Positions 10,040 through 39,789 of a stretch of DNA of 64,000 nucleotides are shown piece by piece (within the stretch, counting starts at the first letter, position 1; every line of letters starts with the position of its first letter). A program made the position numbers and the translations under genes. This DNA is from Antechinus flavipes (lineage: Eukaryota), in assembly GCF_016432865.1 (NCBI RefSeq), contig NC_067399.1, positions 655,836,001 through 655,900,000 on the forward strand, given 5' to 3'. Under the pieces are notes generated by a model. The model was not told the origin of the DNA. It saw only the letters and a program-made list of their open reading frames with translations, and did not search any database.

Positions 10040-11100
10040 GGTAGAAGATCACAAACAATAACAGTGATGAGTAGGGGAAGAGAAATTGAGTTTCCCTGAA
10101 AGTGAATCCTAATAAAACTACATCATTTCCAGGGTGTTGATAAGTGAAATAAGAAGAAATACAGCAAAGGATGAAAATGGAACAAATCTATTAGCATTTC
10201 TATAACAAACTATTTTCACTGGTGGAAGAATCATTCTAAACCCAAATGTTTCAGGTCCTGATAAGTTCTATGAACAAGTGGATATAGTGCTATGGGAAAC
10301 AAAAAGACATGGACTAAGCTAGAAAAGGAAATCTCTGTCAAGGGGGTGCAATTTTGAAAGCAATGAGAAATTCATTTTCAATATTTTTTTTTTCTGAGGC
10401 AATTGGAGTAAAGTAATTTGCCCAAGGTCACACAGCTAGGAAGTGTTAAGAAGCTGAGGTCACAATTGAACTCAGGTCCTTCTGACTTCAGAGCAGCTAT
10501 CCTAATTACCCCCATTTTCAAGATCTTTAAAGGAGGGAAAGATATTAAATGATAAGTGGGGATATCACAAACATTATTATAAGGGGGAAAAAGTGATCAA
10601 CAGAACATGTGCTCATTTTCTTATCTCCATCTTTCTTATTTTTATGAAAATAACAAATCAATAAAATTGATGTTTGCCACTTTCATGGAGGATTCTTGAA
10701 TAGAAGTCAAAGATTCCTTTTAGATGGGGAGATTTTCCAGTTGTAATAAGTAGGTGACATTGCACCAAGTGCACCAAACAGCAGAGTAGCAGACTCTTCT
10801 TTATGAAATCCCCAACCACTCAAAAGAGTTTGTCCTGACAATCCACACAAGAAACACCAAATGGATGAAGAACGCCTCTTGCCTAGCTTAGAACTTGCGA
10901 TTGTATTTATGGCCTATTGAATCTGTCCATCTGTACATATACTTTGGAAAGATATTGTAATGGACAGTGAGCTGATCCCTGAATGGAATCAGATAAAATC
11001 AGATTGGGTGGCTTGAACAAATTGGGGAGCACTTTCGGTGATTCCAAGAACCTCCCATGTTGCTTACATTTCTATTCTTTCTATGATGTCCTATGTGGCC
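10040..11100 (+). mobile_element. RTE-clade LINE fragment (marsupial RTE-like), interrupted by a WSINE1
   Basis: Conceptual EIPNHSKEFVLTIHTRNTKWMKN at ~10804-10872 resembles RTE reverse transcriptase; boundaries approximate. Confidence 0.6.
10384..10513 (-). mobile_element. WSINE1-type SINE
   Basis: ctgaggcaattggagtaaagtaatttgcccaaggtcacacagctaggaagtgttaag... with poly-T on the plus strand. Confidence 0.75.
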
Positions 11101-11407
11101 GTGAAATATGGAAAGAAGGAATAAATGATTGAAAAAGCATGTATTTAATATGATATGCCAGGCCCTGTGCTAAGCACTGGGAATAGAAATGTAAACAAGC
11201 AAGATAATTCTTATCCTCAGAGAGAGTTTATATTCCATTAGAAGATAACACACACGGATGTCCAGGAGGAATAAGAGAAATCAGAGAAAATTGTGGTTTT
11301 CATAGCCTTTCCCAGGATGGTCATGTAGATCTGCTATTAATTGAATAGCATGGAGTGAGTGGGCCAGGAATTGGAATTGGAGAACTGCAGAAAGTTACAT
11401 GATATAT

Positions 11408-12222
11408 CAGTATTTTCTTCTTTCCCCCATATTCGCGTTATGAATATCTGATCTCCTCTGATAGAATGTAAATTCCTAAAGGGGTGAGAGTGTTTTGTTA
11501 TCCTTGTACCCCCCCCCAAGTGTAATAAGTAGATACTTAAGAAATGCATTGTTGACTAACTAGTTAATTGATTTAGAATTGCAGAAAGTTGTATGATATA
11601 TGCATGTGTGTGTGTGTGTGTGTATGTATGTATATCTGTGTCCCAGCAAAATAAGATCAGTGCTCATCATTTACAATGCCAGGTCTGGAGTCAGGAAATC
11701 CCGAGTTCAAATCCAGCCTCAGATACTTACTAGATACTTACTTAGACCTTAGACTTTAAACTTCACCCTGTTTCCCTCAGTTTCCTCATCTGTAAAAAAC
11801 AGGCTGGCCAAGGAAATGGCAAAGTACTCCAGTAAATCTGCCAAGAAAACCCCAGTAGGGTCACAAAGAGTAGGACATGAGTAAAGAACTGAACAACAAC
11901 AATAAGGTGTGATGAGGCTGTGTCCCTGTGAAAAAGGAAGTTGTAAAAGTTCCTGAGATCCCTGCCAATGCTAAGTATGATGAGGACCTTGTATAATTTA
12001 CTTTCCCTCTCTGGAGCTCACTTCCTTTATTTAGAAAGTGAGAGGAATTATGCTAAATCAATTAACTAGTTAGTCAACAATGCATTTCTTAAGTATCTAC
12101 TTATTACACTTGGGGGGGGGGTACAAGGATAACAAAACACTCTCACCCCTTTAGGAATTTACATTCTATCAGAGGAGATCAGATATTCATAACGCGAATA
12201 TGGGGGAAAGAACAAAATACTG
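11408..12222. repeat. inverted repeat: arms 11408-11576 and 12053-12222, spacer 476 bp
   Basis: The reverse complement of arm 2 equals arm 1 except one substitution (11417/12213) and one homopolymer indel (C9 vs G10). Confidence 0.97.
11685..11905 (+). mobile_element. MAR1-type SINE inside the inverted-repeat spacer
   Basis: gagttcaaatccagcctcagatacttact core; aaggaaatggcaaagtactccagt...gggtcacaaagagtaggacatg tail. Confidence 0.7.
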
Positions 12223-13688
12223 TCAAAGTACATGTTTGGAAGGAAACAATAAGAGTCCCTTGGAAGATCTGAGCAAATCTTGAAGGAAACATTTTAAAGA
12301 AGTAAGGAACGGAAGGAAATCTCTTCTAGGCAAGGGGGCAGTCAGGACCAGTCATGGAGAAGGAAGATGAAGGGCTGTGTAGAAGCAGCCATTTGGACTG
12401 GAGCATATAGTACAGCAAGGAGCCTAATGGGTAATTAGGATGGAAGAGTAAATCAGAGTCAAGACATGAAGGATTGTGAAGAAGGCCGGAGATTCTTTCT
12501 AGCTCGAAATCTAGAACCCTGCGCTTCTTTGTATTCATCAATCATTTATCAAGCAAGGAACTCTGGATAGGTGCCTTTACCTCAGTACCTTAACTTAGTC
12601 CACTGCCTTTTATTTTCCTCATCTGGAAAAAGGGGGCAGAAGCAGAGACTTCTTTAGAAGAAGCTGCTCTAAAAGAGTAGATAGATTTATTTTACCTTTG
12701 GGTCAAGAGCCCATTTTAGGCTCTAGGAGAAGAAATCAAATGGAGCACAAAATATCTTTTAATTTATTAATTGCCAAATAAAGAAAAGGAAATCAACCCC
12801 AGAGAGGAGAGAAGGAGTCACAGGACCACTTTCTTGGCTTTAGTTTCTAATGAGCAGAGAACCACAGCCTCCAGCCACCATAGCAAGCCTTGGTGAGGAG
12901 TTAGCAATTGCCTGGGGCTGGAAATATCTTTGATCGAGAGGCCCAGGCAGGATTCCTAAGACCTGGAGCTCATTTAGAGCTCCTTTGTCAGCTCTTCTCA
13001 TTTCACAGGTGAGGAGGCAAAGGCCATATATGACAAAGGGAAAGCAAGGTTAACAAAAATGTTTTTTCTTTTTTTCCTATTCAAGTTTACAGACTCCTTG
13101 ATCTCTGGTCCAGGTTAAAAACCCCAGAAATGCTTAATCTTCGCCTGTGATCTGCCTGTGATAGACTGATTGATTGATTGGAAGCAAAGAACTTTGGGTC
13201 CAAAGTCCACATTTACTATTAACTGTGTTACCTCTGGCAAGCAGATTTACCTCTGTCCTCTGTAAAATGACAGGTGGTGCAGTGGATAGAGCATAGGACT
13301 GGGCAGTCAGGAAGACCAGACATTCCTTCCCTGGCTGTGTGAGTTCTAAGCCAGTCACCTCATTTCTTTGAGCCTCAGTTTCCTGATCTGTAAAATGGAT
13401 GCAAAAATACTGACTAGCCAAATGGAGCCACAACAACATAAAAAGCTCACCGTGGTCAAACTAGGAGGAAAGTCATGGACCCCTCTGGCAGTCATTCTGG
13501 TTAAGCCTATAGACCCCTTTTCAGGTTAATGATTTAAATGCAGAGGATTGGAATAAAAGCAAAGTTAGTGGACATTGTGATGTCATTTTTTCCCACCCAA
13601 GTTCACAGACTCCCTTAAATCTGCTCATGGACCCCAACTTCAGAATCCCTGATCTGGAAGTTAAGAAGGAATGCATAGGACAACTTAC

Positions 13689-13718
13689 ACATCCCAAACG
13701 ATGGCAGCTCTGTCCCAT
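13689..13718 (-). CDS. HK1: HK1 sperm/testis-specific N-terminal coding exon 1 (MGQSCHRLGC); whole exon 13689-13777
   Basis: Acceptor ctatcttctcttctttcctcctcaatctgaccttcaccag at 13778-13779. The 59-nt leader has an in-frame TGA and a strong Kozak (acaATGG). 30 coding nt end at a perfect gtaagt donor (13683-13688). MGQSCHR matches recalled human MGQICQR and mouse MGQNCQR. Confidence 0.85.
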
Positions 13719-26872: not shown

Positions 26873-27042
26873 NNNNNNNNNNNNNNNNNNNNNNNNNNNN
26901 NNNNNNNNNNNNNNNNNNNNNNNNNNNNNNNNNNNNNNNNNNNNNNNNNNNNNNNNNNNNNNNNNNNNNNNNNNNNNNNNNNNNNNNNNNNNNNNNNNNN
27001 NNNNNNNNNNNNNNNNNNNNNNNNNNNNNNNNNNNNNNNNNN
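26873..27042. other. assembly gap (170 N)
   Basis: Run of N. Confidence 1.
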
Positions 27043-32830: not shown

Positions 32831-33452
32831 AGGCCTAACAAGTTTCTAAAATAAAATTAAAATTTTGAATTAAATAATAAAAACTAGTAGTCATGGAAAA
32901 AGCTGCCTGGGAAAATCCCTTTTTGTAGTTCATCCATGAAACATTCTTACCACTTCATCTCTGCCAGAGTTTACAGATGACAAAATGTTTTTCCATATCA
33001 CAAATCAGAGATCTAGAGCTAGAAAGGGCTTTGAGGCTATCTAATGAAATAATCAATCCATCAACAAGTTTTTATTAAACTGAGCCCACAAGTGCAAAGA
33101 GTAAAAAAACTTTGCTCTCAAAGAGTTTATATTCTAACAGGGAAGACAACCATATACCTCTTTATCTATCTGTCTATCTATCCATCCATCCATTCATCCA
33201 TCCATCCGTATATTTATCATTCTTTCTTTTATTTCTATTATCTCTTTATATATATCATGTGTATCTTTGTATATATACATATATATGTGTGTGTGTGTAT
33301 CCTGGGGGTATATATGTATATACAGACCCACATGTCCACATAGAAAGCATATAGTCCAATCCATTCTGCTATGCTGTACTGCCTCTCTTTTCTGGGGAGC
33401 TCATTAATCTAAATTTTTAAATTGAAAAAATAAGGCATCTCATGAGATGACC

Positions 33453-33763: not shown

Positions 33764-34440
33764 ATGACCAGATCGCCCACACAATACGACTTTTTGGGAA
33801 GATGAGTAACATATCAGAAGGAAACATTAGCCAGAGAGTACTTCAGGAGACAAAACCTTCAGTCAACTAATACACCAAATTTGATTGAGAAAATTCAATC
33901 AAGGACATGTAAAGATGACAGAAATACCAAAAAATAATAACCCATGGAAAATGCTTTCAAAAACCTTAAGACTGTTATCCCTAGACAAGAACCAGCCAAG
34001 TCATCTTTTCCTTGGCACTCTGGGAAACCTCCAACCTCTTCTTCTCATTGGTGACTTCTGCCTTTTCAGAAATGACTCCAGCCATCCATCCCGTCTGGAA
34101 TCTCTCCTTCCATCTCTTTCTCATCATCTGTTGAATTGCACCCTTTCCCCTTTCCTCCTCTGGTCCTCTCTCATTTCCAACTCCTTTTTTATGTGTTGTC
34201 TTCTCCTGCTAACATGTAAATTCCTTGAAAGCAGAGATTGCATTACTTATATTTTATCTCCAGTGCTCAGACAGGGCCCGGCACCACATAACCACCTAAT
34301 AATCTATTTGTCCATTTGTCTATTCATCTAGCTATGCAATAGGTTAAAGAGAAGAAGAAACACAAACCATTTCTTGGGGAAGGGAGGTTAGTTCAACAGA
34401 AACACTTCCAAACATTAAAGGTCACTTAATCATGAGGGCA

Positions 34441-38318: not shown

Positions 38319-38463
38319 TCAGTTGTCCTTCCTCAGCTGCAATCTCTTGGCCACGGCTGTGATCAGGGCGGCCCCCTTTCCGCTCCCGTCTTCGGACAGC
38401 ATGAAGGTCACATCGCACTGAGGGGCCAGATCCTTCACGGTTTCCCGCAAGATCCGAGAAAAG
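38319..38463 (-). CDS. HKDC1: HKDC1 exon 18 (last coding exon; [47 protein letters not shown])
   Basis: Acceptor tttctctatgatttctgtag; TGA at 38319-38321; hexokinase C-terminal motif [11 protein letters not shown]; DVTFML/AVAKRLQ is HKDC1-type. Confidence 0.97.
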
Positions 38464-39789
38464 CTACAGAAATCATAGAGAAAGCATAAGAGCCACACAG
38501 AGGAGTTTCCTTCTCAAAGTGGCTTGCAAATGACCTCCATGTTTGAGCCCCAGCAGCCTGCCCCCTTGGCCTGGCTCTTTGAGACCATCACAGAGGTCTC
38601 ACTGACCAGTGAGTGAATCCCCTTGCCTGGGCCCTCTGTGGTGTTGGAGACATGTCAAATGGGACTAATAATAGCACCTATTGTACAAGGTGGTTGTAAG
38701 CATCAAATGAGAGAATAGGTTTAAGGAGCTTCGTAAGCATTAAAATGCTACATATATGTAAGATGGTAATATAATAATAATCATAGTAATAATAGACCGT
38801 TTCTAAGAATTGTTATGGCTGAATCCCTCTCTTTGGTGGATCTGGAGTTGAATCTCTGAATTTTTCTAGGCTAGTTCTGGGACAATAAACGTGGAATCAT
38901 CAGATCTATGATAAAATTTTATTTTTAATTTTAATTTAAATTAAACTTGAATTTAATTTGAATTTGAATTTTTAATTAATCTAAATTAATAATTTAGACC
39001 TGTTATTTCAAAGGTTTGGGGAATTGCCAGCATGAAATTTCCTTTCATCAATGCCGATCGGGAATTTTCTATAACTTTAGAGTTAGATTTAAAATTATCT
39101 AAAGCTCTGATGCGCCAGAGAAGGGGAGGAGGAATGGGACAGAGAATTAGGCCTCTCCTTTCAACAATTTGTACTGGAAAAACAAAAATCACATCATTTA
39201 AATAGCTAAAACACAAAATTCGGAAATTGTTGTTGTGCTGTCGCTTTTCAGTCACGCCTGACTCTCCACGACCCTTTGGGCAAAGATAACAGGAGGGATT
39301 TCCCATTTCCTTCTCCATCTCATTTTACAGACGTGGAAACTGAGGCAGTTAAATGACTCGCTCAGGGTCCCATGGCCAGTAAGTGTGTGTTAGCGTGTTT
39401 GAAGTCAAGCAGAGGAGTCTCCTTGACTTCGGGCCTGGGGCTCTGCGCACTATGGCTCCACCTAGTGGCCGCTCATAAACATCATTTTAAAATATGGGTT
39501 TTTTTGGTAAATTTAAAATCATTTTCATAATTAGCATTTTTAAAGAGGCCCATTTGGCAGAAGGAAGGCCCAGCAGGATGCCAAAGATGGGAAACATCAA
39601 ACGCAAAATCTGAGCTCTGGCTCTGACTCCGCGTTGCCCCTCCTGGTGAACCCCCTGCTTCCCTTTGCTCCCCTCCATCAATCATGCAGAATGATGGTCA
39701 CTGAGGGTTGCCGAGGCTGATGAAGCTAATCATTCTATGGGTAATCAAGGCTGGCTCTGGCCCTCTGGCCACAGGTGGGTTTTTTGGTT

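What the first reader, a model, noticed from the sequence alone, without database searches (positions are those of the whole stretch)
11408..12222. ~99% identical 170-bp inverted repeat made of ancient L2-like sequence in the HK1S leader intron
Seen: arms 11408-11576 and 12053-12222 differ by 1 substitution and 1 homopolymer indel, and both retain a CGCG. The sequence resembles a heavily decayed L2 3' end (tagaatgtaaattcctaaagggg...agatacttaagaaatgcattgttgactaact), so independent L2 insertions cannot explain the identity. In pre-mRNA it would fold into a 170-bp stem with a 476-nt loop. Knowledge: inverted L2 ends have given rise to miRNAs (miR-28/151 family), and long intronic stems are ADAR and endo-siRNA substrates. 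Inference: a recent templated inversion-duplication or ongoing arm-to-arm conversion, possibly a dsRNA element in germ cells.
Basis: partly seen in the sequence, partly recalled or inferred. Interest (0 to 1): 0.7.

Follow-up and report, generated by a model that had tools for sequence, protein, structure and literature searches.

The report
Near-identical inverted L2 fragment pair
Two copies of a 170-base piece of an ancient LINE-2 repeat face each other 476 bases apart in non-coding DNA next to a marsupial hexokinase gene, and they are far more alike than the short duplication made when one copy was inserted, so they were probably corrected against each other; nothing shows that the pair has a function.

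Summary
The arms are 11408-11576 and 12053-12222. They differ by one substitution and one C-run length difference, and the spacer is 476 nt. As RNA, either strand would form a stem of about 168 bp.

The arms weakly resemble two other L2/MIR-type tails in the window (z 4-5). No third copy occurs in the 64 kb.

The left arm is bracketed, to the base, by a 27-bp direct repeat that matches at only 24/27. So it is a discrete insertion. Its target duplication has diverged about 11%, against 0.6% for the arms (Fisher p=0.009).

Best reading: one arm was inserted as an inverted copy some time ago, by retrotransposition or template switching. The arms were then homogenised by gene conversion or template switching. 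A young duplication remains a live rival.

I obtained no cross-species or read evidence.

There is no Rfam miRNA match, and no run recorded as RNA holds the stretch. The dsRNA role and the "HK1S intron" placement are untested.

Earlier notes of this scan report several other local "copied backwards" repeats elsewhere in this genome. This is an ordinary kind of feature with a neat detail.

The parts
11381..11407 (+). Direct repeat, copy 1 (AGAACTGCAGAAAGTTACATGATATAT); ends exactly where the left arm starts
   Evidence: 24/27 match with copy 2; only two matches in the window, 0 expected by chance
11408..11576 (+). Left arm, an L2/MIR-type 3' tail fragment in sense orientation; the inserted unit
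   Evidence: identity to the right arm; similarity to the tails at 33040-33146 and 34169-34261, z 4.9 and 4.1
11575..11601 (+). Direct repeat, copy 2 (AGAATTGCAGAAAGTTGTATGATATAT); its first two bases (AG) overlap the last two of the arm, a 2-bp microhomology
11590..11633 (.). TG/TGTA microsatellite in the spacer
   Evidence: it is the cause of the sub-threshold mir-297 hit
11640..11905 (+). SINE with an RTE-type tail inside the spacer (approximate limits; classified from knowledge of marsupial repeats).
12053..12222 (-). Right arm, the same L2/MIR-type fragment in antisense orientation; no flanking direct repeat
12223..12290 (-). Possible continuation of the L2 element beyond the right arm (a CCTTCAAGA..GCTCA motif recalled from the L2 3' UTR); not significant in tests within the window
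   Evidence: p=0.07 and 0.19 against two other copies; the control left flank gave p=0.8 and 0.55

Best explanation
This is a real inverted pair of a roughly 170-bp L2-type 3' tail fragment. The left arm is a discrete insertion that carries a 27-bp target-site duplication. It arose in one of two ways. Either it is a 5'-truncated L2-type retrotransposition (target-primed reverse transcription), from the neighbouring L2 or from the same master element, or a replication or repair template switch copied the right arm backwards and re-copied 27 bp on return. That event is not recent, because the 27-bp duplication has drifted to 24/27. The arms have since been kept identical, or were recently made identical, by intrachromosomal exchange between them (gene conversion or template switching between the arms). 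This exchange stops at the ends of the homology, which is why identity ends exactly at the duplication. Shown here: the anatomy, the divergence contrast and the L2-type nature of the arms. Inferred: the insertion mechanism, the homogenisation, and the age. Function: most likely none. If the region is transcribed, either strand gives a dsRNA stem of about 168 bp, which would be a generic ADAR/Dicer substrate.
For: The arms are 168/169 identical with sharp ends. A 27-bp direct repeat abuts both ends of the left arm, is unique in the window and has 0 matches expected by chance. Divergence is 3/27 in that repeat against 1/169 in the arms: Fisher p=0.009, and P(>=3/27) is 5e-4 at the arms' rate. 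An error-prone copying step would have hit the 169-nt arm as well. The arms match two other old L2/MIR-type tails at only about 58-62% identity, so they are ancient sequence and not a young family consensus. There is no third copy in 64 kb. An assembler does not invent an insertion with an imperfect target duplication. Homogenisation of inverted-repeat arms by conversion or template switching is well documented (PMC1803023, PMC8604942, PMC3723533).
Against: I have no orthologous sequence and no reads, so neither concerted evolution nor the age of the insertion is observed directly. Three mismatches in 27 bp is a small sample (95% interval 2.4-29%). Arms of 170 bp are short for efficient mammalian gene conversion. 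The arms show no GC enrichment, as GC-biased conversion might give (36% against 37-44% in the flanks). The 27-bp repeat could predate the insertion. Copy number across the whole genome is unknown.
Confidence: 0.5

Rival explanations
1. A young, lineage-specific local inverted duplication (within the last 1-2 million years). A replication or repair template switch copied 12222->12053 backwards into a site 476 bp away and re-copied 27 bp on return. The three mismatches in the 27-mer would be chance, errors made at the switch, or a pre-existing imperfect tandem 27-mer.
For: 99% arm identity. A 2-bp microhomology (AG) at the inner junction. Earlier notes of this scan describe several other 'copied backwards' repeats of 107-329 nt in this genome, so the process is active in the lineage (unchecked notes). 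The mechanism is known (PMC5453318, PMC8794818).
Against: P(>=3 mismatches in 27) is 5e-4 at the arms' divergence. Copying errors should have hit the 169-nt arm too. There is no microhomology at the outer junction. An insertion landing exactly between two pre-existing tandem 27-mers would be a coincidence.
Confidence: 0.27
2. Assembly artefact: only one arm exists and the other was created by mis-joining or a chimeric read.
For: The homopolymer length difference is typical of sequencing error.
Against: The spacer is unique and the arms differ by a substitution. The left arm sits inside an imperfect 27-bp target duplication, which artefacts do not produce. Contigs of runs from three to four organisms hold 53-83% of the sampled words of 10600-13000, though this is not resolved to the junctions. 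The N runs lie far away, the nearest at 26873.
Confidence: 0.04
3. The arms are two copies of a young multicopy element, or the whole 815 bp is a transposon with long terminal inverted repeats.
For: The genome-wide copy number could not be measured.
Against: There is no other copy in 64 kb. No target duplication surrounds the 815-bp unit (p=0.4), and none surrounds the right arm. The 27-bp duplication of the left arm is too diverged for a young insertion. The spacer holds an ordinary SINE and a microsatellite. A metagenome scan for a 32-mer of the arm was blank, which is uninformative.
Confidence: 0.05
4. A selected hairpin-RNA element (a source of endo-siRNA or miRNA, or an ADAR-edited regulator) in a testis-specific hexokinase-1 leader intron, with arm identity kept by selection on pairing.
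For: A perfect stem of about 168 bp on either strand. L2-derived miRNAs exist (PMC6433296, PMC7913837). The location is downstream of a hexokinase gene on the - strand, near a candidate leader frame.
Against: No Rfam family matches. No run recorded as RNA holds the stretch. Selection on pairing would allow compensatory and G-U changes, and it does not require near-identity to the base. 99% identity with sharp ends at a target duplication is the signature of copying, not of selection.
Confidence: 0.05

Closest known systems
Inverted repeats homogenised by arm-to-arm gene conversion or template switching (sex-chromosome palindromes, PMC3723533, PMC8327919; C. elegans long inverted repeats, PMC1803023; short inverted repeats in yeast, PMC8604942)
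   Same: The arms are far more alike than sequence of the same age beside them (here the target duplication). Identity stops at the ends of the homology, and a spacer lies between the arms.
   Different: The arms are only 170 bp, against kilobases to megabases. The locus is probably autosomal and non-coding, with no genes in the arms. Concerted evolution across species was not observed here.
Template-switch mutations that create hairpins (four-point model, PMC5453318; RNA hairpins and new miRNAs, PMC8794818, bioRxiv 10.1101/2023.04.19.537475)
   Same: A nearby sequence is copied in reverse complement. A return point upstream of the departure point would duplicate the 27-mer.
   Different: Typical events span tens of bases and occur in place. 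Here 169 nt were copied across 476 bp, and the flanking duplication is older than the arms appear to be.
L2-derived miRNA precursors (miR-28, miR-151; PMC6433296, PMC7913837)
   Same: The sequence is L2-derived and has hairpin potential.
   Different: No covariance-model match was found. A 169-bp perfect stem with a 476-nt loop is not a Drosha/Dicer pre-miRNA geometry. Expression is unknown.
Inverted SINE pairs in introns as ADAR substrates (inverted Alu pairs in primates; from general knowledge)
   Same: Two retroelement fragments in opposite orientation within about 0.5 kb would form long dsRNA if transcribed.
   Different: Those pairs are independent insertions about 80-90% identical, whereas these arms are 99% identical because one arm is a copy of, or was corrected against, the other.

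Membership tests
L2 (LINE-2) / MIR-type 3' tail derivative | Sequence similarity to the conserved L2 3' tail (TAGAATGTAAGCTCC..GAGGGCAGGG core and AATAAATG..TTGTTGA end) | tested here: met
   The arm aligns to two other tails in the window that carry the core motif (33040-33146 on the - strand, 34169-34261 on the + strand) with z 4.9 and 4.1, p 0.001 and 0.006. Three other copies were not significant.
Non-LTR retrotransposon insertion by target-primed reverse transcription | Target-site duplication abutting both ends, with the element's 3' terminus next to it | tested here: met
   The 27-bp direct repeat at 11381-11407 and 11575-11601 matches 24/27 and sits exactly at the arm ends. The arm ends in a TGAA/TTAA-like tail, as L2 does. 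A template switch with an upstream return would give the same picture.
Non-LTR retrotransposon insertion by target-primed reverse transcription | The source is a longer element of the same family | tested here: inconclusive
   L2 likeness beyond 12222 gave p=0.07 and 0.19.
Template-switch inverted duplication | Inverted copy of a nearby template, with microhomology at the switch points | tested here: inconclusive
   The template lies 476 bp away. There is a 2-bp AG overlap at the inner junction and none at the outer junction.
Template-switch inverted duplication | Derived state absent from outgroups | not testable with these tools
ORFs over the junctions are not in the protein collection.
Inverted repeat maintained by gene conversion | Arms less diverged than sequence created by the same event | tested here: met
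   1/169 against 3/27, Fisher p=0.009.
Inverted repeat maintained by gene conversion | Concerted evolution: arms more alike within a species than orthologous arms are between species | not testable with these tools
   No relatives' sequence could be obtained.
Inverted repeat maintained by gene conversion | GC-biased composition of the arms | tested here: not met
   Arm GC is 36%, against 37% and 44% in the 2-kb flanks. This is a weak criterion for so short a tract.
mir-28 / mir-151 or any described miRNA family | Match to the Rfam covariance model | tested here: not met
   At E<=1 there are only sub-threshold hits, none in the arms' pairing: mir-297 over the TG microsatellite (29.5 bits against a gathering score of 90), SCARNA7 and DUF805b.
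Hairpin-RNA / ADAR substrate | Long perfect intramolecular duplex | tested here: met
   168 pairs and about -300 kcal/mol on either strand.
Hairpin-RNA / ADAR substrate | Transcription, small RNAs or A-to-I editing | not testable with these tools
   No listed holder is recorded as RNA, and no reads could be laid.
DNA transposon / MITE with long terminal inverted repeats | Target duplication around the whole unit, and other copies | tested here: not met
   The flanks of the 815-bp unit are not similar (p=0.4). There is no other copy in the window. The rest of the genome was not tested.

The most novel reading that the evidence does not exclude
A 170-bp autosomal inverted repeat has been held identical by arm-to-arm exchange for more than 10 million years across dasyurid marsupials. 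It persists because its transcript, made from a testis-specific hexokinase-1 leader region, serves as a germline hairpin RNA (an endo-siRNA source or ADAR target).
Probability: 0.04. Interest if true: 0.6.

Novelty: new member of a known kind. Interest (0 to 1): 0.25.

Why it matters
If orthologous loci confirm it, this would be a compact, dated example of concerted evolution in a very short inverted repeat. The insertion's own target duplication serves as an internal clock showing that the arms were corrected against each other. That bears on how short a homology can sustain conversion or template switching in a mammalian germline, and on how long perfect hairpins made from old repeats can persist as raw material for small-RNA genes. 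On present evidence it is a structural curiosity without demonstrated function.

Tried and rejected
3. Exact look-up of eight ORFs over or beside the four junctions: none is in the collection. I therefore did not spend a costly homologous-protein search on them.
4. A scan of metagenome contigs for a 32-mer of the arm was blank, which is uninformative.
5. Rfam at E<=1 gave only sub-threshold chance hits.
6. A test of whether L2 likeness continues beyond the right arm was not significant.
7. A search for a target duplication around the right arm or around the whole 815 bp, and for decayed inverted homology outside the arms, found none.
8. Rejected the reading that the arm is a transposon terminal inverted repeat or a young family (no supporting feature).
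9. Rejected the reading that the mismatches in the 27-mer are copying errors, because the 169-nt arm made in the same event is almost error-free.
10. The HK1 somatic exon 1 motif was not found in the window.

Full report
**1. Observation**

The repeat finder gives two abutting inverted pairs (11408-11517/12113-12222 and 11509-11579/12050-12120, each 99%), split only by a one-base length difference.
- A gapped alignment gives arms 11408-11576 and 12053-12222 (read). There is one substitution: 11417 C against the complement of 12213. There is one extra base in a homopolymer: C9 at 11509-11517 against G10 at 12112-12121.
- Both arms keep CGCG. The spacer is 476 nt.
- The stretch 11400-12230 folds as RNA at -408 kcal/mol against -199 +/- 8.6 for shuffles. 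The arms alone pair over 168 positions on either strand.
- The homology ends sharply. The sequences just outside the arms show no residual inverted similarity.

**2. What the arms are**

- A word-7 blastn of the arm against the 64-kb window finds only the two arms.
- The arm carries the core and end motifs that I know from the L2/MIR 3' tail.
- As a test inside the window, I located other tails with those motifs and aligned them.
  - Two of them (33040-33146 on the - strand, 34169-34261 on the + strand) align to the arm over about 100-130 nt at roughly 58-62% identity, z 4.9 and 4.1.
  - Three others are not significant.
- My impression that the L2 element continues beyond the right arm (12223-12290 on the - strand) did not reach significance.

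**3. The key detail**

- The left arm is bracketed by a 27-bp direct repeat, 11381-11407 and 11575-11601. It matches at 24/27, with all three differences transitions.
- Copy 1 ends at the base before the arm. Copy 2 starts on the last two bases of the arm.
- The 27-mer occurs nowhere else in the window, and 0 matches are expected by chance.
- The right arm has no such repeat, and neither does the 815-bp unit as a whole.
- The left arm is therefore a discrete inserted unit with a target-site duplication. This also makes an assembly artefact very unlikely.

**4. Relative ages**

- The duplication differs at 3/27 sites (11%, 95% interval 2.4-29%). The arms differ at 1/169 (0.6%, interval 0.01-3.3%).
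- Fisher p is 0.009. At the arms' rate, three or more differences in 27 bp has probability 5e-4.
- If both were created in one event, the arms must have been homogenised afterwards.
- Sloppy synthesis at the event does not explain the contrast, because the 169-nt arm made in the same event is almost clean.
- A rough scale comes from the share of 31-mers held by runs of other organisms (converted).
  - Organisms A-C are about 0.6-2% diverged from the window.
  - Organisms D-E are about 4-5% diverged.
  - Organisms F-G are about 7%.
  - On that scale, the duplication looks as old as the deeper splits and the arms as young as the shallowest. This is inference from small numbers.

**5. Mechanism**

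- Origin of the left arm, option (a): a 5'-truncated L2-type retrotransposition. The element's 3' tail abuts the duplication, as target-primed reverse transcription gives. L2 needs no poly(A), and none is present.
- Origin of the left arm, option (b): a replication or repair template switch that copied 12222->12053 backwards and returned 27 bp upstream of where it left (four-point model, PMC5453318). The 2-bp AG overlap at the inner junction fits either option.
- Earlier notes of this scan list several other local "copied backwards" repeats in the same genome, which they call yellow-footed antechinus, a dasyurid. These notes are unchecked, but they raise the prior for option (b).
- Whichever the origin, the arms were later corrected against each other. 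This happened either by intrachromosomal gene conversion or by template switching between arms. Both are documented for inverted repeats (PMC1803023, PMC8604942, PMC3723533).
- An inverted repeat born identical can stay so while exchange outruns mutation. A 27-bp direct repeat cannot.

**6. Context and function**

- Hexokinase exons (Pfam Hexokinase_1 and Hexokinase_2) lie on the - strand from about 63.2 to 38.3 kb. The repeat is about 26 kb downstream of that gene's last coding exon.
- The HK1 somatic first-exon motif is not in the window. A short MGQSC... frame lies at 13686-13718 on the - strand.
I did not test that idea.
- Rfam finds no miRNA family in the arms. The mir-297 hit, at 29.5 bits against a gathering score of 90, is the TG microsatellite.
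- No listed run that holds the stretch is recorded as RNA.
- The dsRNA reading is therefore only a structural possibility, true of any transcribed inverted repeat pair.

**7. What could not be done**

I worked beside those places afterwards and sent none of their letters to a search tool.
- ORFs over the junctions are not in the protein collection.
- A metagenome scan was blank.
- As a result there is no read-level confirmation, no genome-wide copy number, no spacer-orientation test and no orthologous comparison. The last of these is the decisive test between "old and homogenised" and "young".

**8. Verdict**

This is a real, well-defined inverted L2-fragment pair of a known kind. Its own target duplication gives an internal clue that the arms were homogenised. 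There is no evidence of function.

| Reading | Confidence |
|---|---|
| Older insertion followed by homogenisation | 0.5 |
| Young template-switch copy | about 0.27 |
| Artefact, multicopy element, or selected hairpin | about 0.05 each |

Interest is 0.25.

Noticed in passing
window 38322-63204, - strand: Exons of a hexokinase gene (Pfam Hexokinase_1 and Hexokinase_2), with the C-terminal GSGKGAA exon at 38322-38513. The gene runs off the high end of the window.
   Followed up: partly
window 13686-13718, - strand: A short frame beginning MGQSCHRLGCV, 5 mismatches from the mouse sperm-type hexokinase-1 leader motif as I recall it. The match is no better than several chance hits in the same scan.
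   Followed up: no
window 11367-11381 and 11590-11633: A (GGAATT)2.5 repeat lies just left of the 27-bp direct repeat, and a TG/TGTA microsatellite lies just right of its second copy. The insertion site lies between two simple repeats.
   Followed up: no
window 11640-11905: A SINE with an RTE-type tail sits in the spacer. If it arrived after the inverted pair formed, the arms were originally only about 200 bp apart.
   Followed up: no
window 26873-27042, 51722-52011, 57816-57947, 59463-59844: Four runs of N (gaps or masked). They were left as they are.
   Followed up: no
window 12300-12420, + strand: Sequence typical of another old interspersed repeat (..GGCAGTCAGGACCAGTCATGGAGAAGG..TGGACTGGAGCATATAG..) directly beside the right arm. 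It was not classified.
   Followed up: no
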